Part shown: positions 49,925-61,091 of the stretch, piece after piece | Position numbering within the stretch: the stretch's first letter is position 1 | Layout of the letters: every line of letters begins with the position of its first letter | NCBI GenBank assembly: GCA_964019335.1 | Contig: OZ025736.1 | Location: 186,001 to 250,000 of the forward strand | Direction of reading: 5' to 3' | Length of the DNA: 64,000 nucleotides | From: Diplonema japonicum | Taxonomy: Eukaryota; Protista; Euglenozoa: Diplonemea | Notes under the pieces: generated by a model | Told to the model about the DNA's origin: nothing | What the model saw: the letters and a program-made list of their open reading frames with translations, nothing else | Database searches by the model: none | Made by a program: the position numbers and the translations under genes

Positions 49925-51484
49925 CTATTGCGGCGCCTTTCGCCTTCGTGCCCTCATGATCTGCGCTTTACTTTTCGGTGTCCCAGGGTTGGCGTTGTTA
50001 GTGGTAGCGGGTGCTGCTGTCGTGTTCAGATTGGCGCCTACAGTGGGAGTAGTGGCTACAGCAGGAGTGTTGGTTGTGCTTTGCTCATTAACAATAGGCA
50101 CAGTCTTGTACGGCGGTGATAGTGTGCTGATGTGAGGTGACTGTGGTGCCAGTGGTACATGGGGTATGATGGGGCACAAAGGCTTCGCTGGTGTCTTCGC
50201 TGGTGCCTGCTTTACAGGTGTGTGCTTTGCCGACATTTGTTTGGAGGTTGCCTGAGCCTCATCATTCTCAAGACTCTGGCTCTGACTTGATTGTGCCGCG
50301 GTATTTGCTGTGCCTTGTTCGACTCTCTGCCTTTTGGGTGCCGGCTGCAGCGTCTGCTGAGGCGTCCGCGACAGTCCCGACAAGGGCCTTCTCCTTGGAG
50401 GCTTGGGAGGTTCGTCCGATGCCACGGCGTGGACGTACCTGCATGTCGCCCCGTTGGTGCAGCTGCCCTTCTTCGAAAAGTAACGACACAGCACGTCGTC
50501 TTGTGTGCCTTTTCTTACAACCTTCCAGACATTGTTGCACACCATGCACAGCAGCTGCAACCTGCATCGCCCATTCGCCGTCTCCGAAGACTGGACCTTC
50601 CACTTCGAATGGTCACAAGGCGCTCTGTTGGCATCGCATTCCTTCACGCCCTCCGTGCTGATGATCACCGACTTCCCTACCATCCCAGTCGTGGCCGCTT
50701 CAGGAACTAAAGTAAGCGGAGGGTGCGACCAGTGTGACGAGTACCTGAAGATCAACGGCCTTCCACCTGTGATGACCTCACCGAAGGCCAGCTCATTCCT
50801 GGTCTCTTTGTCGCAGTAGGAAGTCAGATACTTGCTCATCAACCGCGCATCGACCTTGCCCGCCCTTCCTTTGATGTCTTCTTTTGTGAGCTTCTTCAGC
50901 ACGTAGTCACCTTCGTAGCTTTCGTCGTTGCTGTTAAGATAGCAAGGGAAGGGCCCCTTGCGAACTCTGATGAACACAACATAGTAAGGCTCGAAGGGTG
51001 CGACGGGTGTGTGGACAGGGAGGAGCATTACAGTGACGAGGCCGTGACTGACACTGGGCCAGAATCTGTCGAGGGTGGAAAAGAAGGGTGTGAGGAAGCT
51101 GTGGAGCTGTGATGGGTGCGTGTTCAGCGGGATTCCTTGAATGATTCCGTCACTTTCGATGCCTAGCAACAAGATGCCGCCGGAAGTGTTGAGATATGAA
51201 CAGACCCACTCTTCAGCGAGGGAGGCAAGCGCATGCCCCCATAGCTCAGGCTCGTCAGGGTTGAAACACCCGAGCAGCCTGTAAGGAGGCATCTCGACGT
51301 CTTTCGGGACAGCCAGCTTTGTGTGCAGCAACATCTTCATATTGAAAAACCTCTCAGCCACTTTGTCATGTACTTCATACTTTTCTTCCTCTTCCTCATC
51401 ATCGCTCTTTCCCTTCGGCTCTTCGATGCTCTCCGTGACTCCAGAGGCCGAAGTTGAGGTCTCCTCGTCGCTGCTGTCTACCAT
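49925..51484 (-). CDS. Schlafen/AlbA-2-like domain + CxH..CxxC knuckle + CCCH zinc-finger protein
   Basis: WVCSYLNTSGGILLLGIESDGIIQGI (AlbA_2 core), CDHSKW...LCMVCNNVW and CRYFSKKGSCTNGATCRYVH. Confidence 0.8.
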   Translation of the reverse strand: MVDSSDEETSTSASGVTESIEEPKGKSDDEEEEEKYEVHDKVAERFFNMKMLLHTKLAVPKDVEMPPYRLLGCFNPDEPELWGHALASLAEEWVCSYLNTSGGILLLGIESDGIIQGIPLNTHPSQLHSFLTPFFSTLDRFWPSVSHGLVTVMLLPVHTPVAPFEPYYVVFIRVRKGPFPCYLNSNDESYEGDYVLKKLTKEDIKGRAGKVDARLMSKYLTSYCDKETRNELAFGEVITGGRPLIFRYSSHWSHPPLTLVPEAATTGMVGKSVIISTEGVKECDANRAPCDHSKWKVQSSETANGRCRLQLLCMVCNNVWKVVRKGTQDDVLCRYFSKKGSCTNGATCRYVHAVASDEPPKPPRRRPLSGLSRTPQQTLQPAPKRQRVEQGTANTAAQSSQSQSLENDEAQATSKQMSAKHTPVKQAPAKTPAKPLCPIIPHVPLAPQSPHISTLSPPYKTVPIVNEQSTTNTPAVATTPTVGANLNTTAAPATTNNANPGTPKSKAQIMRARRRKAPQ

Positions 51485-51941
51485 GTTTGCTGCGAACTTA
51501 AGTGTGAAAAATAAGATTGGAAGAAAAAAAAAAAAGAAAAAAATCGGAGAGGATAGACAAGTGAGTAAGCAAGATGTGCCCTTCATTCTCCTCTTACAGC
51601 AAGATCCCCTTGCTATTTGCCATTGAGTAACTATCACGAGAAGTAGCAGTAGTCAGCGCATGGCAATGTCAGTGTGTGGTTAGTGGTGACAAGAGCCTCG
51701 TGAAGGACCCAAGCGCAGTTCCTTCAAGAGGTCCATTTGTCACAAGGGGGGGAGGGGGAGGGGGAGGCAGAGGGGGACATTAAAAAAAGAGCAAAATAGC
51801 TTGCTATTAAGAATGAAACAAAAAAGTAAAAAACCGCACACTATTGGTGCTCATTTCTTTTTCTTTTTTTCCTTTTTTTTTGGTTACAACAAAACAAAAA
51901 AGATAATAAATAAACTAAAATAAAGAAGAAAAAAAAAAACA

Positions 51942-54191
51942 TCACTCATCTTCGTCCTCGGCAAGAAAAACATTAGCTTGACTTCTGTTTAATATTGTCT
52001 GCAGCAGCAACCTTGTCATCGATGCCTCTGTGCTCGGCATTCCGGATACCTGTGTAGTGGTAGTGCAGAGCTTCAAGCATACCTTCGACATCACCAGACC
52101 ATGCCTACCTTCATAGTACGCAAGCTTCTGTCTTTGCGGGCCACACACATGGCTTACGAACTGCCACCCCACTTCAGAGTCGCACTGCTTGCAGTACAAC
52201 GGTGCCACCTTCATTCGCCCCTGCGCTAAAAACTGAACTGTAACCGGGCCGGTCCTGCAGCTTCCCTCCTCGACGGCATTAATGTACGTGGCTGCCTCGC
52301 TTCTCATGGAGCCCTCAAGCTTCCATCTATGTCTGGTTGACAGGATCTGATCTCTCCTACAAAGCACATTGCCACAGGCCTCGTTTGCACACTTCAAAAC
52401 CTGTTCGTCCTCTAGTGGCGGTGCGGGGTCCGTTCTCAAGTACGCATTGCACAGCAAGTATTTCCCCACCCACGACTCTCCTGCTTGCCTCTCAGGCGGT
52501 TCCGTTACAAAAGTCACACCCAGTGCACGCCTGCATTTCTTGCACTGAACATCCAGCACGTCAGCACCAAGGCACAACGCGCTGCAGTACGTCAGCGACG
52601 GGTCTGCATGCACGATGTTCTCGGTGAGCTTCGCCAGCAACACACCACTGCCGTCATCCAAGTCAAGGCATCCGCCGATAGAGGCGGTGTCCACTGCATT
52701 GAACTTCTGAGCCACAGGCAGCCCGCAGCATTTGCTATAGTACACCTCTTCCCTGGCTGCCTGGACCCGTCTCTCACGTTCTTCAATCTGCGTTCTCTCT
52801 TTACTCACAAGCTCCTGTTGTTCCTCCACGGACAACAGCTGCCCATACCTCACGCGCAGCTTCTTCACAATACTGAACGTGCTCTCGCTATCTTTTTTCA
52901 CTAAACACAGATCGCTCTCCACCGGTGTCACAAGCACACCTCCTATTTTCAGCAATCTGACGATGTCACCCAATCTTTGCTCTGGGCACGATGCCCCGCT
53001 GTGGATCTTGTCGTAGCCTGCTTTATGCTCCTCAGGTAGCGCTGCAAGCAAACGGTCGGTGTCTGGAACAGAGAAGGCATTTGACGTAAAAACGCTGATG
53101 CTGCTCAGGTCAGGATGCGGCAGGGGCTGGTCGCTCACCTTCAGAGCGCTGAAGTTTCCACAAGACAGTGTCGTGCCGTCCCATCTAAGTGTGTAAGTGA
53201 GGGGGACCCATGTGAGCTGATCCCACATGTATCTTGTGCTGAGCACCTGGTTCTCCTGCAGGGAGATGTCAACATAGGCTGCAGTGTCGTCCGCAGCGTG
53301 CAGTGACCCTTTGCACAAGGTGGTAGTCTTTCCTCTGTTGGGCCAATGGAACCTGCCTCTGAAGGATAGTAGAGTATCTCTGGAGTCTATGAACAAGTAG
53401 AACTGGTGTCCGTCGTGTGACCCCGCAAACACTGTGCCCGGCAGCAGCTTCCCCATCGGTGTCGGCGCCATGTGCTCCTCCCTTTCTTTGCGTGCTGCGT
53501 GGACCCTCCTGTTCTGCACTGCTATATTGCGTTTCGCGAAGGCTGTCACCGTATCTCGTATATCGATGGCGTGCACTGTGCCCTGTTTTTTAACAAGCTG
53601 CGATGCGAATGCAGCAACAACACCGCACCCTGTGCCAATATCTAGGAAGGCCTCACCTTGTTTCAGGCCCAGTTCTTGCAGGCAAAAAACATGTAAGTGT
53701 GCTGCTGAAACATTGAACTGCAGTAGTGAGACTTGCAAAGGGTGGTGTGTGACGTAAGCCTGTGCCCTGTGCTGAGGTGGAACGAACTCACCCCGTGGAA
53801 GCTGCAACATCGCTAGCTCGAGATCCGCGTCTCGCAGGCTGTGCTCGTCAAGGTTTTTAAGGTTTGTAACTAGTTCGGAGTTACTGCAGCTTCTGCTTGC
53901 AACCATGCGTATTTCAGAATGCAGTAGTTGGCTCTGTATCTCTGCTACTGCAGCCCTTCTCAGTTCGTAGTGCTCTGGGCGCTTCTGCATGATTTCGGCT
54001 TCCAGTTCCTCCTCCACTCTTTGGGGTATCTTGCAAAGGTGCTTCCTGTCCAAGGGGCACGTCAAGGTTCCATCAGCCATCGAAAACCACCGCTGCAAAC
54101 AGTGGCAGCAAAAAGTATGTCCACATTCGGACCTCACAGGCTGAAACAGCAGCTCGTAACATATGGGACACAGATATTCGTCATTATCCAT
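51942..54191 (-). CDS. RING finger + PCMT/PCMTD-like methyltransferase (split by an insertion) + two Yippee/Mis18-like domains
   Basis: RING: CPIC..CGHTFCCHC..CPLDR. PCMT-like: NVSAAH..FLDIGTGCG..HAIDI and YDKIHSGASC..LLKIGGVLVTPV. Yippee-like: CCG...DVQCKKCRRALG and CANEAC...LYCKQCDSEVGWQF...YYEGR. Confidence 0.85.
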   Translation of the reverse strand: MDNDEYLCPICYELLFQPVRSECGHTFCCHCLQRWFSMADGTLTCPLDRKHLCKIPQRVEEELEAEIMQKRPEHYELRRAAVAEIQSQLLHSEIRMVASRSCSNSELVTNLKNLDEHSLRDADLELAMLQLPRGEFVPPQHRAQAYVTHHPLQVSLLQFNVSAAHLHVFCLQELGLKQGEAFLDIGTGCGVVAAFASQLVKKQGTVHAIDIRDTVTAFAKRNIAVQNRRVHAARKEREEHMAPTPMGKLLPGTVFAGSHDGHQFYLFIDSRDTLLSFRGRFHWPNRGKTTTLCKGSLHAADDTAAYVDISLQENQVLSTRYMWDQLTWVPLTYTLRWDGTTLSCGNFSALKVSDQPLPHPDLSSISVFTSNAFSVPDTDRLLAALPEEHKAGYDKIHSGASCPEQRLGDIVRLLKIGGVLVTPVESDLCLVKKDSESTFSIVKKLRVRYGQLLSVEEQQELVSKERTQIEERERRVQAAREEVYYSKCCGLPVAQKFNAVDTASIGGCLDLDDGSGVLLAKLTENIVHADPSLTYCSALCLGADVLDVQCKKCRRALGVTFVTEPPERQAGESWVGKYLLCNAYLRTDPAPPLEDEQVLKCANEACGNVLCRRDQILSTRHRWKLEGSMRSEAATYINAVEEGSCRTGPVTVQFLAQGRMKVAPLYCKQCDSEVGWQFVSHVCGPQRQKLAYYEGRHGLVMSKVCLKLCTTTTQVSGMPSTEASMTRLLLQTILNRSQANVFLAEDEDE

Positions 54192-54275
54192 CTTCCTGTT
54201 GTGAGTGTGGAATGAACGCATGTTTAGTGAAAAATATGAAAACTAAATGCTGAGCACAGAAGTACTAGCTTGTTG

Positions 54276-57200
54276 TTAAGTGACGCAATTGTGCGTGTGT
54301 CGCATCCAAGCGGCCAACGGCTTAAGCTTGCCGGGGAAGAGGGGGCTGTGCTGCTTTGTGTCGGTCATTGCAGCCTCACCGCTGTAAGAACTCGAGAGGT
54401 CAACAGGGCTTTTGTTACAGAATGGAGGTGTAGGGATTGGAGGGAGTGTTGCTGCCAAGGAGTGCTTCGAGAGGGCGTTCAACAGTGCAACTCTAGTAAC
54501 AGGTGTAACAGACGTGAGCGATACGTCCACAGCTTTGAGGCTGCAATGTGTTTTTAACACTGGAATGAGCTCTGCTGCTGTCGTGTCTGTGATACCAATG
54601 TTGTTACTCAGATTCAAGCTTGAAAGGGTGATATTTTGCTGCAGAGCACGGCATGCAGCACCCATCTCGCTGTCGGCGATGCCTGTGTTGCTCATGTTCA
54701 CAGCTGTCACAGTACTGTTCTCCCCCAAGGATCTGAATAGCGCTTCCACCTGATCATGGGTAAATCTCACGTTGCTGAAGTCCAACGAATAACCGCACCT
54801 CTTGTTGCCGCTTAGCACACCGCAGCACTTGGACACTTTTATTGTCATGTCCTGCGTGTCGTCCCGCAGCGTGTCCAACACGTCCTGCAGGCGCATGTCT
54901 CGAACAACAGGTTCCGACACCAACCGCATGACCCTCGGCTTCTTCATGTCCCAGCTTTTGCTCACATCACATTGCATATCAATGTTCCTCATCTGACACT
55001 TCATCGCAAGCTTCTGTGCACTGACACTTGTGCCTATCGACGTCGATCTCCTCCTTGGCCTCGTCTTCGACACAAGCAACTTGCAAAACTGATGGCTCAT
55101 GTTTTCAAGCAGGAGGCGTGCTCTCTCTTCCACGGATTCGATTTCCCGTCTCTCCTTCGTGCCGTCATTTCTCACCATCTTGAAAGCGTTTTTGAAGTAC
55201 ATTCTTATAACCTTCTTTCGTCTAATCAAGATGTCCCTCCACTCCTGTGTTGCCTGTCTGACTAGCCTGCATTTGGTTACAGCAAATGCATGCTTAAGCC
55301 CCCGCAGCTGTCTGTAATGCGCTGCTTTCAATGAGCTGTTGTGGCTGGTCGTCTTCTCTGCTGCCAAGCGCAACCATGTGCCCACAGCTTTTTCTTCGAT
55401 GAAATACCGTTCTCTTGTTTCTTCCTTACAGAGCACGGAGACAGTGGTCAGTGGAAGTGGGGTAGTATACTTCAAGTGTAGCAGCTGCTTGACAGTAGGG
55501 TGGTCTTGGTAAGTTTCCAGTAAGGTGCTCCTTGCAGCGTTTTCTACTATTCGAAGTTCTGAAAGTTCGGTGCTGTGTTGTGTGATGATGTTGCGAACGT
55601 TCAGTTGCAGAAGTCTCTTTTTGTACTGCAGCAGCTCGTGTTGCAAGCGGAGCCGACACTTCTGGTTGAGCCATTTTCCTTGGATCACGTACGCGGCAGC
55701 CTCCCTCTTAGAACTGTACGTTCGCCAGACGTGCTGAACGATGATAGCACTACCGATGCGCACAGCTTCGTGCATTTCAATCCTGCGGGCCTCTGCATGG
55801 AGACCATGGATTTTTCTTGCAGCATGTGACTTGACCATGCACTGGATGGTGACGCATGCTGCATCCTTGATTCTTCGCTCGGAGGACAATGCCAGCCTCA
55901 TCAAGCCACTCCTCCCCACACGGTTGAGCAGCCTTATCGCATGGTGCTCTTTCTTCAATTCGCGTAGGTGTGCAGCGTATGATTCGCGCAGGATCCCCCT
56001 GAGTATGCAGCCCTTGCCTGCCTTCTGCAGCACCAGACCTGCAGTAGCTTGCAACATGGCCCTCATCAGATTCTCGTCTCGTTTTCTTCTCAGCACTAGT
56101 TCTTTTAAGCTTGCTACTTGTCTTCTCCAGCACTGCAGTACTAACACAGCCTTTCCCACTATCCTTCTTCTAGCCATCAACTCATGCCTTTCCCGCATCC
56201 CTCTTCCAAACCTTTGCATGGCAGCGGCAGCACGGTTGTTGGCTTTATAAACACATTCTTTGTATTGTCTCTTCAGATGTTCTCTTCTTTCCCTTGCACG
56301 TTGCCTGCCTGTGACGCCCCGTACGATCTTCTGGATGCATGTCGCCTGGTGGTTTACGAACAACATCTCATGAGCTAATGCTGCGGCCGTTCGTTTTTTC
56401 GCTACCTGTATTCTTGCACTAGACCGTCTAGCCATTCTTTGGATCACACACGCTGCCCTGCGTCGGAGAAGAACCAAACCGCGAAGATGACTCCTGAGGC
56501 TATGTATACATGCATGCACAACCAGCGCAGATCGGTGGCGCATACGCAAGGTTTCTGCCATAGCAGCTCTGCTAAAAGCTTGTAGGCCAACAACCTGCGC
56601 CTCCAGCCTGTCCTGTCTAGTCTTGAGAGCATACTTCCTCCCGGCATGCCCTCTCCATACTCTTTCTATCTCTGTCGCGTTTCTTGATAACATCCTCTCG
56701 TGCTGCATCTTCTTCACAGCAGCTTTCGACATGACACGTGCCACGTGGTGCCTGTAGGCCCACTGTATCTTCTGCGCACATTCGTCTTCAATGAAGATGA
56801 TCTTCCTTTGCCGCATAAAACGCGCTTTTCGCAGAATCACTACTCTCCCCTGTGCAGACCACATTCTTGCAGTCCTTTGTAGGAAGACTGCTTGCCTATT
56901 ATACCATTGCAAAATAGCTTTCTTGATCTCTTGCTTAGACTGCCTTTGTCTGCTGAATGCCTGCACCACTATTGCAGCATGCTCTTTGTGAGCCATGCGC
57001 TCCAACAGGTCTTCGTAGTCGCACTCCACGGATTGCTTGCTTACTCGTCTCGACCTCAGCTTCCTTGCCAACGACAGACGAAAGAACCTTTGCATTGTGG
57101 CAACACTAATGGTGGCTCGTGACGCAGCGGCTTCCTTAGCGGCCATCGCCACGCAGTCTGCATGCTCGCGTGTGATAATAAAGCGGGCTTCCTCTTCAGC

Positions 57201-60200
57201 GGCCTCGTGCTCATCTTGTTCCTGCTGCCTTATGCTGTGGTAGGTGAGGAACAAGTTGGTCAACAGCCTGGCCTCCCCGGCGATCGTAACTTCTCTTCTG
57301 TGGCACTGCTCCCAGCTGGCCATTGCAAGGACTTGAATTTCGTGCCATCTTCTCCTACTTGAGTACATCACCGCAACCCTATGTCTTTCTTCGAGGGATT
57401 TGTTTTCATTTGCCCGAAGCAACAAACACTCGCTGCTTTTAGAACCCCAGACTTCAGAGAGGCCGCTGTGCTGAAGCGTCACCATGGCGTCTCGTTGCTC
57501 GCGCTCTTCGAGCTGTGTGTCAAACAGTTCCTGCTCACACATGATAGCTTGCCTTCCCTCAGCGAACGAGGCCGCTAAGCTAGACAGTCCGCTCAATTGA
57601 TCTGACGTGAAACTGTCGCGTTCCACCTGCTCTTGTAACAGAAAGAGCTGTTCTTCTATGCTGCAGCTTTCACTTCGCATGGTGAGCCATGTGCTGTGGA
57701 GTGCCACAAGGTTGTCGTCCCATAAGTTTGTGCGAGACAAGGCCTCATCACCTTCGGCTTCTTTCAATTTACTTCCCAGCAATGTGCTCCACTCAGCATT
57801 CACCACTAACTCCCTACCCGCAGCCTCTTCGACACACAGCACCTTTTGCTCTTCATTTCGTCTCATGTTGATACAGGCCACCACAATGCCCTCGACGCCC
57901 TTCTCATGATCGTCTTCAAGGAATGACCTGCTATTTCCCTCATTCACCACAATCGTGAGCCGCATAGCCTCCTGCAGTATCACATGTACGATGTGAGATG
58001 CCTTCTTCGCCACAGGGGACCATTCTTCGGACTCTTTTGAGATTAAAATACCCCGGGAAATGTTTTCGATCACCTCCAACTTGTGCTGCAGGACCGCGTA
58101 GTACCCTGACCAGAACCCCGCATCGCATGGTGCCCTCTCAGCCTCATCGGCAGCAGTTATCTCTGTTCTGACCACCCTTTCGCTCACCACAATAGCATTT
58201 GTAGTGTAGTAGTTGCGTAGTTCTGTCCTGTAAATGTCTTGCTCCATGGTAATGAAAGACCTTGCCTCTCCTTCGACGCCTTCCTTGTCTGCCATGGTGA
58301 CTACGTGGCGCGTCTCAATGTGCGTTGTGAGGAGTGTGCACCGCAACACGTCTTCGGATCGCGACACCTCACATCGCTCTGTCTCCTCCTCCTTGCTGAA
58401 CTCTCGCAGTATCGCACACAGCCCCGCCTCGTTCAGTGACGTTGCCTCCCGCGACACAATCATCTCACGTGCGCCACGCTCGATCCTCTGCACTGTAAGA
58501 CGCTTTCTCGCCTCGGTTCCTAATATCTCGGTGACTTCTTCTCTTGAACCCTCGATGATCCATGTGCTCCACTGCTCCTCCAGTTCGTCCTTCCACTCGC
58601 CTATCAAGTACAACCTACCGTCCTCTTCACCTTGCAGCAATAGGCTTCTGTCGTTGTCAGGGAACGATGAGTCCAGAATACTAACCAATCTCGAGTGCTC
58701 ATTTCCTATCGCTGCCTCCCGCTCCGCGGCCTCATCGTCCAGCATCTGAATGCGCAGTAAGTGGAACCGTTCTAGAAGCTCTTCTATAAAGGCAGCTGAG
58801 AATGCGGACTGCTCTTCAATCACCACGAATGCTGTTGCTTCACTTGCCCGACACAACACACGGCCTTTGCTCTCTGTGATACACAGGCTTGCAACCTCCA
58901 CGTGGAGCAGGTGTAGTGTGTGATCTGCTTGGATCTTGCTGAGCATAGAGTGGTTTTGAACTTCAATGGCACCACGCGACAGCACTTCTTGGTGTGGCGT
59001 CCACATGACCTCCAAGGATACTCGCAACATGTTCCACTTGCGTTGTTCCTCTTCGGCGATACCTCTGTTGACCCACCAGTGCCTGCCCCACAGCCCGTAC
59101 CCTCTGCTACGTTCTTCTAGAAGTTCCACAGTTTCTATGTTTTCATGGTTCCTCAATTCCCGCAGGTACTCGTCCACCTGCTCGTCGTGTCTGCTGTGCA
59201 TGGCTTCCTTTTCAGCTTCTAGCAAGTTGCGCAACGCCACTCTCGCCTTGGCCTTCTCAGGCCCTTCTGTAAGTTCGTTCCTCAATGCCAATTCGTTCAG
59301 CAGCATAGCGTGTCTCTTGTTCATGTCGTTCACCTCTTTTGTCATGCCCTCCTTCCGCATGAACTCTTCCCTCTTCAGAAGAAGGCGCTCCTTCCATTCC
59401 TTGTGTATGGCGTCTCTGGTGTTGTGGATGTCTTCGTAACCTGCGACGATGCCTTCCCATTCTTCGTCGAACTGCGCGGCGATTGCTGTCCTGGCATAGT
59501 ACTCCGCCTCGTGCTGCGTTTCTGCTAGTTCAGCATGCTCGTTCTCAACACTCTTCCTCTCCATGTGCTGCCGAACCAGCACCTGGATCTGCTCCTTCTG
59601 CTTCTCCCTTCCCTTGTACCCTCGCCATATCCTCTGCACCATGATGGAAGCAGCTTCAGTCACAGCACCTTCCTCCAGGTCATCTGCGCTACAGAACACG
59701 ACAGACTGCTCAGCCTCCAGAAGCAGCTTGATCCTACTCGCTTCCCTTTCGTACAAGCCACCTGTAGCGCAGTCCCTGCAATTATACACAATGGATCTGA
59801 TGTACAGAGCGCGCAACTTGTGCTTCACAGTTGCGAGCGGTAGCAGGGCTTGAAGGGTCTCCAGGGTGCTGATGTTGAGATGCTGTGCAATGATAGATGC
59901 GGACTTGATGCTAATCAGCCTGATGCACCTGACGAGGAGGAACAGGGTCGGGGGCACTGTCACGTCCTCTGTGGTGCCCAACGTCAACACCATGTTGTGC
60001 AGCAGGAAGGGCAGCGTGCTGGCAAGGGATGCAAGGTGGTCGTGGAAGACAGCACCGTTGTCATCGTGCGTTGTGAGCGCCAGGCACAGCTCAAGGAGCT
60101 CAGTGTAGAGGGCCGTGTAGACGGGGTCTTGCATCGCTGCGTCTTGTGCCGCCAGTGAGCTCAGCAGTATTGCCACAGCGCAAGGTATCTTTGCACCAAT

Positions 60201-61091
60201 AACGCACTCCTTACCAAAGTGCAACACCACCTTCCGTACGCTTCGCACTGCGTTGTACATCGACAGCAGAAGATGCTCTTGAAAGCTTCCTACCACTTTG
60301 AAGTAATCATGGGCTGCTACGTGCGTGGCTCCAAAACGCAGAATGGTGTCGAGAAGCCGAAGTGCGTCACGTCCGACAAGGCTGTCGGGGGTGCTGCCTC
60401 CCATGGCGGTGACAATGCAACAGTAGGCAGATGTGTAGCCCAGCGTGCTGAGCGCGTCTCCGTTTTCGATGAGGGTTCTGATTTCGGGTTTGGTGTGGAG
60501 GGCGGCGAAGGTCATGAAAGCCTGTCTCTTGACAAAGGTGTGTGCCTGGCTGTTGAGGAGGGCGCCGAGGAGGAGGATGTTTTCCTTGTTGGGGTGCTTT
60601 ACAAAAGAGCTGCAGCATTTGCTGAAAACACCTTCTGAGGAGAGAACAGAACTGGCGTGCGGGCTGTGCCGTGCGAGCTGGGCGACGATCTCGAGAGAGA
60701 CACTCGTTTCAGTGCACAGCAGCTGCGAGGCCTTGCACCTGAGGAGCGCATCCACCTCGTTCTGAGCAAGGGAAGGACGACGCAAGACAAGCTCAGAGAG
60801 AATGCCGTCCACGTGCATGGTGTGCTGTGCATGAGCTGCTGTGAGGCGTTGCAGGAACTCTGCATCCTTCAGAATGCGGGAGGCGGAGGCACAGTCCTTC
60901 TTGCAGCATTCGTGTATTATATCCAGAGTGAGGGACACAGCATCAGTTTGCTTCACCCCTCCAACACCTTCTCCGGAGTGGAGCTTAAACAACTCAACGC
61001 TTGCTTCCAGCTCATCTTCATCAGTTATGCTCCCAGTGCTCGAGCTTTCCCTGCTCGAGCAACTACTGGCTGAGGGCTTCGAGTGCGGCAT
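54276..61091 (-). CDS. Giant multi-IQ calmodulin-binding protein with helical N-terminus, coiled-coil repeats and C-terminal RI-like LRRs
   Basis: 2271-aa ORF with many IQ-like motifs (VQRIWRGYKGR, IQKIVRGVTGR, IERVWRGHAGR) and terminal LxxNxTLxSLNLSNN repeats. Confidence 0.88.
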   Translation of the reverse strand: MPHSKPSASSCSSRESSSTGSITDEDELEASVELFKLHSGEGVGGVKQTDAVSLTLDIIHECCKKDCASASRILKDAEFLQRLTAAHAQHTMHVDGILSELVLRRPSLAQNEVDALLRCKASQLLCTETSVSLEIVAQLARHSPHASSVLSSEGVFSKCCSSFVKHPNKENILLLGALLNSQAHTFVKRQAFMTFAALHTKPEIRTLIENGDALSTLGYTSAYCCIVTAMGGSTPDSLVGRDALRLLDTILRFGATHVAAHDYFKVVGSFQEHLLLSMYNAVRSVRKVVLHFGKECVIGAKIPCAVAILLSSLAAQDAAMQDPVYTALYTELLELCLALTTHDDNGAVFHDHLASLASTLPFLLHNMVLTLGTTEDVTVPPTLFLLVRCIRLISIKSASIIAQHLNISTLETLQALLPLATVKHKLRALYIRSIVYNCRDCATGGLYEREASRIKLLLEAEQSVVFCSADDLEEGAVTEAASIMVQRIWRGYKGREKQKEQIQVLVRQHMERKSVENEHAELAETQHEAEYYARTAIAAQFDEEWEGIVAGYEDIHNTRDAIHKEWKERLLLKREEFMRKEGMTKEVNDMNKRHAMLLNELALRNELTEGPEKAKARVALRNLLEAEKEAMHSRHDEQVDEYLRELRNHENIETVELLEERSRGYGLWGRHWWVNRGIAEEEQRKWNMLRVSLEVMWTPHQEVLSRGAIEVQNHSMLSKIQADHTLHLLHVEVASLCITESKGRVLCRASEATAFVVIEEQSAFSAAFIEELLERFHLLRIQMLDDEAAEREAAIGNEHSRLVSILDSSFPDNDRSLLLQGEEDGRLYLIGEWKDELEEQWSTWIIEGSREEVTEILGTEARKRLTVQRIERGAREMIVSREATSLNEAGLCAILREFSKEEETERCEVSRSEDVLRCTLLTTHIETRHVVTMADKEGVEGEARSFITMEQDIYRTELRNYYTTNAIVVSERVVRTEITAADEAERAPCDAGFWSGYYAVLQHKLEVIENISRGILISKESEEWSPVAKKASHIVHVILQEAMRLTIVVNEGNSRSFLEDDHEKGVEGIVVACINMRRNEEQKVLCVEEAAGRELVVNAEWSTLLGSKLKEAEGDEALSRTNLWDDNLVALHSTWLTMRSESCSIEEQLFLLQEQVERDSFTSDQLSGLSSLAASFAEGRQAIMCEQELFDTQLEEREQRDAMVTLQHSGLSEVWGSKSSECLLLRANENKSLEERHRVAVMYSSRRRWHEIQVLAMASWEQCHRREVTIAGEARLLTNLFLTYHSIRQQEQDEHEAAEEEARFIITREHADCVAMAAKEAAASRATISVATMQRFFRLSLARKLRSRRVSKQSVECDYEDLLERMAHKEHAAIVVQAFSRQRQSKQEIKKAILQWYNRQAVFLQRTARMWSAQGRVVILRKARFMRQRKIIFIEDECAQKIQWAYRHHVARVMSKAAVKKMQHERMLSRNATEIERVWRGHAGRKYALKTRQDRLEAQVVGLQAFSRAAMAETLRMRHRSALVVHACIHSLRSHLRGLVLLRRRAACVIQRMARRSSARIQVAKKRTAAALAHEMLFVNHQATCIQKIVRGVTGRQRARERREHLKRQYKECVYKANNRAAAAMQRFGRGMRERHELMARRRIVGKAVLVLQCWRRQVASLKELVLRRKRDENLMRAMLQATAGLVLQKAGKGCILRGILRESYAAHLRELKKEHHAIRLLNRVGRSGLMRLALSSERRIKDAACVTIQCMVKSHAARKIHGLHAEARRIEMHEAVRIGSAIIVQHVWRTYSSKREAAAYVIQGKWLNQKCRLRLQHELLQYKKRLLQLNVRNIITQHSTELSELRIVENAARSTLLETYQDHPTVKQLLHLKYTTPLPLTTVSVLCKEETRERYFIEEKAVGTWLRLAAEKTTSHNSSLKAAHYRQLRGLKHAFAVTKCRLVRQATQEWRDILIRRKKVIRMYFKNAFKMVRNDGTKERREIESVEERARLLLENMSHQFCKLLVSKTRPRRRSTSIGTSVSAQKLAMKCQMRNIDMQCDVSKSWDMKKPRVMRLVSEPVVRDMRLQDVLDTLRDDTQDMTIKVSKCCGVLSGNKRCGYSLDFSNVRFTHDQVEALFRSLGENSTVTAVNMSNTGIADSEMGAACRALQQNITLSSLNLSNNIGITDTTAAELIPVLKTHCSLKAVDVSLTSVTPVTRVALLNALSKHSLAATLPPIPTPPFCNKSPVDLSSSYSGEAAMTDTKQHSPLFPGKLKPLAAWMRHTHNCVT

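What the first reader, a model, noticed from the sequence alone, without database searches (positions are those of the whole stretch)
51942..54191. RING-PCMT-Yippee-Yippee fusion: candidate single-chain 'damaged-protein' E3 ligase
Seen: one uninterrupted ORF joins a C3HC4 RING, a protein-L-isoaspartate methyltransferase-like domain with an intact SAM motif I (LDIGTGCG), and two zinc-binding Yippee-like domains. Known: PCMT/PIMT recognises isoAsp damage; animal PCMTD1 is a Cullin5 adaptor; YPEL5 associates with the CTLH/GID ligase; and the cereblon CULT domain, which shares the Yippee beta-tent fold, binds C-terminal cyclic imides. Inference: this is a Rosetta-stone protein that couples recognition or methylation of isoAsp/succinimide damage directly to ubiquitination, without a cullin. 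I do not recognise this architecture as characterised.
Basis: partly seen in the sequence, partly recalled or inferred. Interest (0 to 1): 0.85.

Follow-up and report, generated by a model that had tools for sequence, protein, structure and literature searches.

The report
RING–isoaspartate-reader–double-Yippee ubiquitin ligase
A marine protist (diplonemid) gene really does encode one protein that joins a ubiquitin-ligase RING finger, a non-canonical copy of the enzyme fold that recognises age-damaged (isoaspartyl) proteins, and two Yippee-type zinc domains; it belongs to an undescribed family found across Euglenozoa and probably tags damaged proteins for destruction, though no function has been tested.

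Summary
CDS 54191→51942 (minus strand) is expressed as one spliced-leader mRNA.

Domains:
- RING, which is C3HC3D rather than C3HC4.
- A complete PIMT fold (Z 27.5) with SAM motif I intact, split by a ~120-aa β-rich insert of unknown fold.
- Two β-tent domains. The first resembles Mis18 and bacterial cereblon (Z 13–14). The second resembles YPEL5 (Z 13.8, 1.6 Å, 28% identity).

The same architecture occurs in 12 representative proteins from diplonemids, euglenids and prokinetoplastids. A shorter version occurs in Cyanophora.

The PCMT-like domain is not the repair enzyme, which the genome encodes separately. It carries Asn where PCMT1 has Thr and PCMTD1 has His, and it lacks the GDG motif. Its best solved match is PCMTD1. 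Its nearest sequence relatives are mostly fused to BTB, SOCS-box or RING modules.

Best reading: a cullin-independent RING E3 whose PCMTD-like domain reads isoaspartyl damage. This is inferred, not shown. The cereblon-style cyclic-imide idea is not supported, because neither β-tent domain has the three-Trp cage.

I found no paper on this architecture. The scan's only other note is this same stretch.

The parts
54196..54197 (-). AG acceptor for spliced-leader trans-splicing; the mRNA body starts at 54195, giving a 4-nt 5' UTR (GAAG) before the ATG
   Evidence: The run X9 contig ends at 54196 with a 20-nt loose end. Its reverse complement is TACAGTTTCTGTACTTTATT. That sequence plus G occurs 214 times elsewhere in the genome, 0 times in the control, and not at this locus. 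Local sequence ...CACAACAG|GAAGATG.
51942..54191 (-). Whole coding region (ATG 54191 to stop 51942-51944), two exons, 738 aa
54045..54170 (-). RING finger, C3HC3D (C8 C11 C23 H25 C28 C31 C45 D48) with I10, W35, P46 and R49 after the last ligand
   Evidence: Pfam RING models; PDB RING matches including TRIM, BRCA1 and TRAF6; conservation in A1; residues checked
53892..54044 (-). Helical linker after the RING (residues 50-100)
   Evidence: Helices at the start of model m7304022f1886; the family profile aligns residues 1-104 with RNF8 and RNF168 RING-plus-helix chains
53460..53891 (-). PCMT-like fold, N-terminal part (residues 101-244): LPRGEF, pre-motif I N160-V-S162-A-A, motif I L183-G190, post-I D210, long helix
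   Evidence: Pfam PCMT 83.7 bits; PIMT and PCMTD1 alignments; fold Z 27.5
53124..53459 (-). Inserted beta-rich domain (about residues 245-356, eight strands) between the helix after strand 2 and strand 3 of the methyltransferase fold; fold unclassified
   Evidence: Model pLDDT mostly above 90; recognisable by phmmer in P0001-P0007 and P0009; no Pfam family; nothing useful from the atlas or PDB sequence search
52830..53123 (-). PCMT-like fold, C-terminal part (residues 357-454): strand 3 with S-N371-A-F in place of GDG, Y393-D394-K-I-H, motif III GGVLVTPV, post-motif III VRYGQL
52755..52829 (-). Charged helix linking the methyltransferase fold to the beta-tent domains (residues 455-479)
   Evidence: H366-385 in the model
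52419..52754 (-). Beta-tent domain 1 (residues 480-591), Mis18/CULT-like; Cys at 488, 489, 550, 553; only one Trp
   Evidence: Model pLDDT 94.3; Mis18alpha Z 13.8, bacterial cereblon Z 13.0, CRBN Z 12.5 on model residues 5-116; Pfam Yippee-Mis18 18.1 bits alone
52083..52415 (-). Beta-tent domain 2 (residues 593-703), Yippee family; C601, C606, C667, C670; G-W676-Q-F678
   Evidence: YPEL5 Z 13.8, rmsd 1.6 A, 97 aligned, 28% identity on model residues 118-228; YPEL5 by sequence E 0.019; Pfam
52050..52082 (-). 33-nt GT..AG intron, in frame, no stop codon
   Evidence: Skipped in contigs of runs X9 and X1 and kept in X4 and X5; the 11 residues are absent from P0001 and P0002; sequence
51942..52049 (-). 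Exon 2: conserved tail (35 aa, GMPSTEASMTRLLLQTILNR then acidic end) plus stop

Best explanation
This is a single-chain, cullin-independent RING ubiquitin ligase.

The N-terminal C3HC3D RING recruits and activates an E2~ubiquitin. The central domain is a complete protein-isoaspartyl-methyltransferase fold. I expect it to hold S-adenosylmethionine and to work, like human PCMTD1, as a reader of L-isoaspartyl (age-damaged) sites rather than as the repair methyltransferase. Damaged proteins would then be ubiquitinated in cis-coupled fashion.

The two C-terminal beta-tent (Yippee-type) domains pack into one rigid unit. I expect them to act as a second binding surface, for a substrate feature, a partner protein or self-association. 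The ~120-aa beta-rich insert has unknown function.

Shown here: the gene structure, expression as a single mRNA, the folds, the motif states, the phyletic spread and the fusion partners of related domains. Inferred: E3 activity, SAM binding, isoAsp recognition and the role of the beta-tent pair.
For: Expression and gene structure:
- One SL-capped RNA contig covers the whole CDS.
- Single transcripts with the same architecture exist in Diplonema ambulator, Lacrimia, Euglena, Urceolus, Papus and Apiculatamorpha.

RING:
- It has the expected ligand spacing.
- The residues that, from general knowledge of RING E3s, contact and activate the E2 are present: I10, W35, P46 and R49. W35 is nearly invariant and P46 and R49 are invariant in the family.

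PCMT-like domain:
- PIMT fold at Z 27.5 (rmsd 1.8 A, 203 of 207 residues), against Z 14.6 for the next methyltransferase family.
- G186, G188 and G190 are invariant and D210 is nearly invariant.
- The family profile's best solved match is PCMTD1 (2e-32). Its C-terminal half scores 54 bits there against 17 bits for an archaeal PIMT.
- PCMTD1 binds isoAsp peptides and proteins only with AdoMet bound and does not methylate them (PMC12590147).
- The domain shares the signature N-[IV]-S-A-P, LD[IV]GxGCG and NxF...YDRIH with the PCMT-BTB proteins.
- Of the 76 nearest non-family relatives, 47 have BTB, 6 a SOCS box and 4 a RING. This sub-type of the fold has therefore been joined repeatedly to E3 modules.
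- The same genome has a separate canonical PIMT (TVSAPHMHA, GDA, HVGAAAP; 204.8 bits).
- The family's PCMT domains form one clade (SH-aLRT 95, quick tree). Its branching groups named diplonemids, prokinetoplastids and euglenids separately.
Against: - No biochemical data exist for any member.
- The Ser that binds the isoAsp carboxylate in PIMT is Thr in two family members and lost in the D. papillatum protein (VVPPA), so isoAsp reading may not be universal in the family.
- The channel residue is Asn, neither the Thr of the active enzymes nor the His of PCMTD1, so activity cannot be read from sequence.
- The insert and the two beta-tent domains have no assigned role. Either could be the true substrate receptor.
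- The deep branching among the N-, H- and T-type PCMT domains is unresolved.
Confidence: 0.55

Rival explanations
1. The central domain is an active isoaspartyl methyltransferase. The protein both repairs (methylates) damaged sites and ubiquitinates those it cannot repair, acting as a repair-or-destroy triage enzyme.
For: Complete PIMT fold; intact motif I and post-I acid, S162 retained, YDKIH and motif III conserved. Asn is smaller than the His that blocks the AdoMet-substrate channel in PCMTD1 (PMC12590147).
Against: The Thr needed for activity in PCMT1 is replaced, and mutating that Thr to His in PCMT1 abolishes most activity. Motif II GDG is replaced by SNA/xNxF, as in non-catalytic PCMTD1 (GNC). 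NCBIfam PIMT equivalog scores are far below their cut-offs (77 against 282). A canonical PIMT is encoded elsewhere in the genome.
Confidence: 0.15
2. The PCMT-like domain is not an isoAsp reader. It is a SAM-binding regulatory or scaffold module, or a methyltransferase for another substrate. The beta-tent pair and/or the beta-rich insert choose the substrates of the RING.
For: Pre-motif I varies within diplonemids (NVSAA, TVTAA, VVPPA, YMSPA). The tandem beta-tent unit also exists as a separate gene in this genome and in D. papillatum, so it works as a module of its own. Beta-tent domains carry a ligand groove in all known families (PMC4287342). The insert is conserved in the family.
Against: Outside diplonemids the family keeps N-V-S-A-P and V-R-[YF]-x-x-L, the two substrate-lining motifs of PIMT. 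The recurring fusion of this fold to BTB, SOCS-box and RING modules without beta-tent domains points to the PCMT fold itself as the receptor.
Confidence: 0.2
3. The beta-tent domains read C-terminal cyclic imides or succinimide intermediates in the way cereblon's CULT domain does.
For: Domain 1 superposes on bacterial cereblon and CRBN CULT domains at Z 12-13. Domain 2 keeps the W and F equivalent to CULT W99 and Y101 (PMC4287342).
Against: The three conserved Trp that form the CULT cage are absent. Domain 1 has one Trp, away from the cage position, and Val at the GW position. Domain 2 has two Trp, only one of them at a cage position. Domain 2 is closer to YPEL5 (28% identity) than to CULT.
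Confidence: 0.05
4. The RING is not catalytic (a structural or interaction zinc finger) and the protein is not an E3 ligase.
For: No activity data. The eighth ligand is Asp in 10 of 15 aligned members.
Against: From general knowledge, Asp as the last ligand is compatible with active RINGs such as the TRAF6 type. The E2-contact and linchpin positions are conserved across the family.
Confidence: 0.05

Closest known systems
Human PCMTD1 (CRL5 substrate receptor; PDB 9oma/9omf; PMC12590147)
   Same: PIMT-like fold with intact AdoMet motif I and post-I. Motif II Asp is replaced by Asn (GNC there, xNxF here). It is the best solved match of the family profile (2e-32), especially in the C-terminal half. 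The fold is coupled to a ubiquitin-ligase module.
   Different: PCMTD1 uses a SOCS box to dock on Elongin BC, CUL5 and RBX2. This protein carries its own RING and has no SOCS box. The channel residue is His there and Asn here. This protein also has a ~120-aa insert and two beta-tent domains.
PCMT-BTB fusion proteins of algae and other protists (e.g. Tetraselmis UniRef100_A0A061S9V0, Pleodorina starrii GLC34352.1); uncharacterised
   Same: Same N-[IV]-S-A-P, LDxGxGCG and NxF..YDRIH signature in the PCMT-like domain. These are the nearest sequence relatives outside the family.
   Different: They have a C-terminal BTB/BACK module (a presumed CUL3 adaptor) instead of an N-terminal RING. They have no insert and no beta-tent domains.
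Canonical PIMT / PCMT1 (EC 2.1.1.77)
   Same: Same fold: Z 27.5 to Pyrobaculum PIMT and Z 26.7 to human PCMT1. LPRxxF, SA(P/A)H, motif I and motif III are present.
   Different: T-I-S-A-P is N-V-S-A-A here. GDG is lost. The fold is split by an insert. The score is far below the equivalog cut-offs. The organism has its own canonical PIMT.
YPEL5 / Yippee family (PDB 8qbn, CTLH-WDR26 partner)
   Same: Domain 2 matches at Z 13.8, 1.6 A and 28% identity. It has two Cys pairs, the GW.F motif and an (E/Y)GR/K motif after it.
   Different: Here the domain is part of a 738-aa multidomain protein and paired with a second beta-tent domain. The first Cys pair is Cx4C. Two of the four predicted Yippee cage positions differ (A-T-Y-I-N here, A-[YF]-L-F-N in Yippee).
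Cereblon CULT domain and Mis18 Yippee-like domain
   Same: Beta-tent fold of domain 1 (Z 12.5-13.8). Cereblon is also a ubiquitin-ligase substrate receptor.
   Different: No tri-Trp cage, no Lon-like domain and no DDB1-binding region. The first CxxC is replaced by an adjacent CC in Euglenozoa.
TRAF6-type C3HC3D RING
   Same: Last zinc ligand is Asp (C-P-x-D). PDB sequence matches to TRAF6 RING.
   Different: No TRAF zinc fingers and no TRAF-C domain. The comparison of the Asp ligand rests on my own knowledge of TRAF6.

Membership tests
RING-type E3 ligase | Eight zinc ligands in cross-brace spacing | tested here: met
   C8 C11 C23 H25 C28 C31 C45 D48. Pfam zf-C3HC4_4 35.9 bits against cut-off 30, zf-RING_UBOX 33.5 against 25.2. 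The eighth ligand is Asp in 10 of 15 members and Cys in 5.
RING-type E3 ligase | E2-contact hydrophobics and the linchpin basic residue after the last ligand (criteria from general knowledge) | tested here: met
   I10, W35 (nearly invariant), P46 and R49 (both invariant).
RING-type E3 ligase | Ubiquitin transfer with an E2 | not testable with these tools
   Needs an in-vitro ubiquitination assay.
Protein-L-isoaspartate O-methyltransferase (PCMT1/PIMT) | [quoted passage not shown] | tested here: met
   Z 27.5, rmsd 1.8 A, 203 of 207 residues of 4o29. Z 26.7 to human 1kr5. The next family scores Z 14.6.
Protein-L-isoaspartate O-methyltransferase (PCMT1/PIMT) | AdoMet motif I and post-I acidic residue | tested here: met
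   LDIGTGCG with G186, G188 and G190 invariant; D210 nearly invariant.
Protein-L-isoaspartate O-methyltransferase (PCMT1/PIMT) | Catalytic-type signature T-[IV]-S-[AQ]-P and motif II GDG | tested here: not met
   N160-V-S-A-A and S-N371-A-F here. The canonical type is seen in the genome's own PIMT and in P0124, P0135 and P0140. NCBIfam PIMT equivalogs score 77.3, 69.5 and 64.8 bits against cut-offs 282, 159 and 188.
Protein-L-isoaspartate O-methyltransferase (PCMT1/PIMT) | isoAsp methyl-ester formation | not testable with these tools
   Needs an enzyme assay.
PCMTD1/2 (SOCS-box PCMT-domain proteins) | PCMT-like domain closer to PCMTD1 than to PIMT | tested here: inconclusive
   By profile, PCMTD1 is best (115.9 bits against 101.9). 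By single sequence and by fold, the PIMTs are slightly better. The tree leaves the deep order unresolved.
PCMTD1/2 (SOCS-box PCMT-domain proteins) | His at the AdoMet-substrate channel (H-[LI]-S-A-P) | tested here: not met
   Asn160 here. H-type proteins form their own clade.
PCMTD1/2 (SOCS-box PCMT-domain proteins) | C-terminal SOCS box (BC box and Cul5 box) | tested here: not met
   No SOCS_box match in Pfam. The C-terminus is two beta-tent domains.
Yippee/Mis18 (PF03226) | Profile match above the curated cut-off | tested here: met
   30.8 bits against 26.6 on the C-terminal 228 aa, two stretches. 24.8 bits, below cut-off, on the whole ORF. Homologues P0007 and P0158 score 35.4 and 29.7 bits.
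Yippee/Mis18 (PF03226) | Beta-tent fold | tested here: met
   Domain 1: Mis18alpha Z 13.8. Domain 2: YPEL5 Z 13.8, rmsd 1.6 A. Model pLDDT 94.3.
Yippee/Mis18 (PF03226) | Two Cys pairs for the apical zinc | tested here: inconclusive
   Domain 2 has C601/C606 (Cx4C; CxxC in most relatives) and C667/C670. Domain 1 has C488-C489 adjacent (CxxC in P0006, P0011 and P0077) and C550/C553. Zinc binding itself was not tested.
Yippee/Mis18 (PF03226) | Predicted aromatic cage Y43, F45, W82, Y84 of Drosophila Yippee (PMC4287342) | tested here: inconclusive
   W676 and F678 are present in domain 2. The other two positions align with T and I (alignment). Domain 1 has Val at the Trp position.
CULT domain (cereblon) | Three conserved Trp forming the ligand cage | tested here: not met
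   Only three Trp occur in the whole 224-aa C-terminal region (residues 574, 623, 676), and only W676 is at a cage position (definition from PMC4287342).

The most novel reading that the evidence does not exclude
The protein is a multi-reader damage ligase. The PCMT-like domain reads, or even methylates, isoaspartyl sites. The rigid beta-tent pair reads a second spontaneous modification in its groove, for example a succinimide or cyclic imide, or methionine sulfoxide, given the fold's kinship to CULT and MsrB. One polypeptide would then integrate several kinds of protein ageing into ubiquitination. Together with the widespread PCMT-BTB proteins, this would mean that isoAsp-directed degradation is an ancient, pan-eukaryotic arm of proteostasis.
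Probability: 0.12. Interest if true: 0.85.

Novelty: new variant of a known kind. Interest (0 to 1): 0.6.

Why it matters
Ubiquitin ligases that recognise non-enzymatic protein damage are only now being defined. PCMTD1 was shown to bind isoAsp in 2025.

This family shows that the same reader fold has been wired to the ubiquitin system in at least three ways: SOCS box, BTB, and a RING in cis. The RING version dates back to the common ancestor of Euglenozoa. Because it needs no cullin, adaptor or separate RING protein, it is a compact system for testing biochemically whether isoAsp is a degron. It also links the functionally obscure Yippee fold to protein-damage surveillance.

Tried and rejected
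- The search for homologous proteins with the whole ORF and with the family alignment returned only two diplonemid transcripts, because its word prefilter was saturated. The exhaustive representative search was needed to find the family.
The unnamed representatives P0003, P0006 and P0009-P0012 could therefore not be assigned to organisms, and presence in trypanosomatids could neither be shown nor excluded.
- The insert stayed unclassified. It has no Pfam family. Atlas feature scores were at most 0.78, in the noise range. The wide fold search of the 386-aa model was filled by methyltransferases.
- A PDB sequence search of the insert gave apparent hits to the designed 'Cake' propellers (E down to 4e-13). 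These come from one 20-residue stretch (…FAGSH, a WD40-like SGSxDG resemblance) matched to every repeat of the designs, and no single stretch passes. I rejected this as an artefact.
- The careful tree did not finish. Only the quick tree is reported, and its deep nodes are open.
- Literature searches for Yippee with isoaspartyl or isoaspartate, and for isoaspartyl with BTB, found nothing relevant.
Exon 1 (703 aa) and the unspliced ORF were searched by reference. Exon 2 (35 aa) was only compared within alignments.
Full report
**Organism and context.** Earlier notes of this scan name the genome as very probably Diplonema japonicum. My data agree with a diplonemid. The closest homologue (66-67% identity) is a Diplonema ambulator transcript. 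The mRNA carries the diplonemid-type spliced-leader tail. The gene lies in a same-strand run of long ORFs. Upstream is a 2271-aa ORF with no Pfam match that ends 80 nt before our trans-splice site. Downstream is a CCCH zinc-finger protein.

**Gene structure.**
- The mechanical ORF is 51942..54221 on the minus strand, 759 aa.
- Contigs of public run X9 behave as RNA. One 2647-nt contig begins with 20 letters that are not in the locus. Their reverse complement is TACAGTTTCTGTACTTTATT. The contig then runs from 54196 through the whole ORF.
- That tail plus G occurs 214 times elsewhere in the genome and never in the reversed control, as expected of the spliced leader and its genes.
- The acceptor AG is at 54197-54196.
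- The same contig, and one from run X1 (a close relative with scattered substitutions), skip 33 nt. Read on the minus strand, this is GTATGC...ACACAG, 52082..52050. Contigs of X4 and X5 keep it.
- The 11 residues it would encode are missing from both diplonemid homologues.
The mature protein is 703 + 35 = 738 aa. Residue numbers below are mature numbers.
Exon 1 and the unspliced ORF were used by reference.

**RING.**
- Pfam RING models pass their cut-offs.
- The ligands are C8, C11, C23, H25, C28, C31, C45 and D48. The finger is therefore C3HC3D, not C3HC4. Asp fills the last position in 10 of 15 aligned members and Cys in the other five.
- From my own knowledge, the TRAF6 RING has the same Asp. 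TRAF6 is among the PDB sequence matches.
- The positions that in characterised RINGs touch and activate the E2 are present: I10, W35, P46 and R49, the basic residue right after the last ligand. W35 is nearly invariant and P46 and R49 are invariant.

**PCMT-like domain.**
- Pfam PCMT scores 83.7 bits in two stretches.
- An AlphaFold2 model of residues 90-475, built on a 20-sequence alignment, has pLDDT 92.8 and pTM 0.90.
- Aligned against about 48,000 representative chains, it matches PIMTs at Z 27.5 (4o29, rmsd 1.8 A, 203 of 207 residues), Z 26.7 (human PCMT1) and Z 20.6 (PCMTD1). The next methyltransferase family reaches Z 14.6. The whole PIMT fold is there.
- The fold is interrupted between the helix after strand 2 and strand 3 by about 120 residues that form eight beta strands. 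This insert is recognisable by phmmer in P0001-P0007 and P0009. It has no Pfam family, no credible PDB sequence match and no useful atlas neighbour.
- Motif states:
  - Motif I LDIGTGCG has all three Gly invariant in the family.
  - The post-I Asp (D210) is nearly invariant.
  - LPRGEF, Y393-D394-K-I-H, motif III and V-R-Y-x-x-L are present.
  - Pre-motif I is N160-V-S162-A-A where active PIMTs have T-[IV]-S-A-P.
  - Motif II GDG is replaced by S-N371-A-F.
- The PCMTD1 paper reports that a Thr-to-His change at a channel residue blocks the AdoMet-substrate channel, that the same change in PCMT1 largely abolishes methylation, and that PCMTD1 binds isoAsp peptides and proteins only when AdoMet is bound (PMC12590147). 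The paper text I read gives no residue number. Placing that residue at the T of T-I-S-A-P, which aligns with H of H-L-S-A-P in PCMTD1, is my reading of the alignments.

**Three sub-types of the fold.** Among the 150 best hits of an exhaustive search of 1.84 billion representatives, the signatures sort cleanly:

| Type | Signature | Members |
|---|---|---|
| T | T-I-S-[AQ]-P, LE[IV]G, GDG | short canonical enzymes |
| H | H-[LI]-S-A-P, LN[ILV]GSG, GNC…YDR[IV]Y | PCMTD1-like |
| N | N-[IV]-S-A-P, LD[IV]GxGCG, NxF…YDRIH | the window protein, its family, and the hits that carry BTB (55 BTB proteins among the hits; nearly all show the N signature) |

- A Pfam scan of the 76 nearest non-family hits found BTB in 47, a SOCS box in 6 and a C-terminal RING in 4. 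Named examples of PCMT-BTB come from the green algae Tetraselmis and Pleodorina.
- The family profile's best solved match is PCMTD1 (2e-32). A much stronger C-terminal half drives this: 54 bits against 17 for an archaeal PIMT.
- The genome also encodes a canonical T-type PIMT (204.8 bits; TVSAPHMHA, GDA, HVGAAAP) on another contig. The window protein is therefore not the cell's repair enzyme.
- A quick maximum-likelihood tree of the PCMT cores places all 14 family members, plus one fragment, in one clade (SH-aLRT 95). Named diplonemid, prokinetoplastid and euglenid members fall into separate groups within it. Deeper relations among the N, H and T types are unresolved, and the careful search did not finish.

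**C-terminal domains.**
- A model of residues 476-703, built on 33 sequences, has pLDDT 94.3 and pTM 0.88. The two domains are therefore predicted to pack in a fixed arrangement.
- Foldseek's best matches are YPEL5, Mis18, bacterial cereblon, MsrB3 and CRBN.
- Re-alignment with ranges shows two separate matches. Domain 1 (model 5-116) matches the Mis18alpha Yippee domain (Z 13.8), bacterial cereblon (Z 13.0) and CRBN CULT (Z 12.5). Domain 2 (model 118-228) matches YPEL5 (Z 13.8, rmsd 1.6 A, 97 residues, 28% identity).
- By sequence, the pair passes the Pfam Yippee-Mis18 cut-off (30.8 bits). Domain 1 alone reaches 18.1 bits. YPEL5 is the only PDB sequence hit (E 0.019).
- Domain 2 has both Cys pairs (C601/C606, C667/C670) and the G-W676-x-F678 motif.
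- Domain 1 has C550/C553, but an adjacent C488-C489 where three relatives keep CxxC. It has Val at the Trp position.
- The CULT family is defined by three conserved Trp that form the ligand cage (PMC4287342). The whole C-terminal region has only three Trp (574, 623, 676), and only one is at a cage position. Cereblon-like cyclic-imide binding is not supported.
- The predicted Yippee cage (Y43, F45, W82, Y84) is half kept in domain 2.
- A separate 330-aa gene in this genome encodes just such a tandem beta-tent pair, with an N-terminal MGTVCCC motif. D. papillatum also has stand-alone versions. The pair is therefore a module in its own right.

**Distribution.** Twelve 50%-identity representatives share the full order RING, PCMT-N, insert, PCMT-C, beta-tent 1, beta-tent 2.
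- Named sources:
  - Diplonemids: Diplonema ambulator, Lacrimia lanifica, and D. papillatum (KAJ9470935.1, auto-named 'Protein-L-isoaspartate O-methyltransferase').
  - Euglenids: Euglena gracilis and Urceolus cornutus.
  - Prokinetoplastids: Papus ankaliazontas and Apiculatamorpha spiralis.
- A 609-aa Cyanophora paradoxa protein has a RING, a PCMT fold without the insert, and Yippee-like sequence. It may be a relative or a gene-model artefact.
Trypanosomatids therefore remain unassessed.

**Mechanism.** I commit to a cullin-independent RING E3 whose PCMTD-like domain, loaded with AdoMet, reads isoaspartyl damage and presents the bound protein to the RING-E2~Ub (confidence 0.55).
- Steps shown: gene, mRNA, folds, motif states, conservation, and the fusion statistics of related domains.
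- Steps inferred: E2 recruitment, AdoMet binding, isoAsp specificity, and any role of the insert and the beta-tent pair.
- Rivals, described in their own sections: a catalytically active repair-plus-ligase enzyme; substrate choice by the beta-tent pair or the insert, with the PCMT fold as a SAM-binding scaffold; cereblon-like imide reading; and a non-catalytic RING.

**Novelty.** I found no paper describing RING-PCMT-Yippee or PCMT-BTB proteins in the searchable library. The D. papillatum genome paper mentions neither isoaspartate nor ubiquitin. The kind, a PCMT-fold substrate receptor of an E3, is known from PCMTD1. This is a new variant of it, with its own RING, an insert and a beta-tent pair. 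The scan's index holds no other note of this architecture apart from this same stretch.

Noticed in passing
window 52050-52082 (minus strand): A 33-nt GT-AG intron, in frame and without a stop, lies 105 nt before the stop codon. It is spliced out in two RNA-type assemblies. This is far shorter than the D. papillatum introns described in PMC10161547, whose median is given only as below 1 kb. How common such mini-introns are in this genome was not examined.
   Followed up: partly
G000:C96:62998-63441 (L002:1468-2460, minus strand): A paralogous 330-aa gene encodes only a tandem beta-tent (Yippee-like) pair behind an N-terminal MGTVCCCPG motif that looks like an acylation signal. D. papillatum has similar stand-alone proteins (KAJ9436489.1, KAJ9437212.1).
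   Followed up: partly
proteins P0014-P0160 (not in the window): There is a large, apparently undescribed family of PCMT-like domains fused to BTB/BACK: 55 of the hits carry BTB. Named examples come from Tetraselmis and Pleodorina. They share the N-[IV]-S-A-P signature with the window protein. A few relatives instead carry a SOCS box, a C-terminal RING or a protein kinase domain.
   Followed up: partly
G000:C113:41426-42052 (L003:1471-2265, minus strand): The genome's canonical PIMT repair enzyme (T-V-S-A-P-H-M-H-A, GDA, HVGAAAP).
   Followed up: yes
window 54276-61091 (minus strand): A 2271-aa ORF with no Pfam match. By eye it is rich in IQ-like basic repeats and has a leucine-rich C-terminus. 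Its stop codon is only about 80 nt upstream of the next gene's trans-splice acceptor.
   Followed up: no
window 49925-51637 (minus strand): The downstream gene encodes a CCCH zinc finger (29.9 bits) with a weak Schlafen AlbA_2-like region (22.7 bits, below cut-off).
   Followed up: no
window 51700-51947: The 3' UTR region is low-complexity: T/A runs and a C-rich tract (CCCCTCTGCCTCCCCCTCCCCC...). The reads tool skipped it as repeat, so the 3' end of the mRNA could not be placed.
   Followed up: no
proteins P0007, P0010, P0012 (not in the window): The prokinetoplastid member P0007 and the unnamed P0010 and P0012 carry an extra N-terminal segment of about 70 residues before the RING that is conserved among them. 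Pfam did not name it in P0007.
   Followed up: no
protein P0077 (Cyanophora paradoxa, not in the window): A glaucophyte protein has a RING, a PCMT fold without the insert, and Yippee-like C-terminal sequence. It could mean the architecture is older than Euglenozoa, was transferred, or arose twice.
   Followed up: partly
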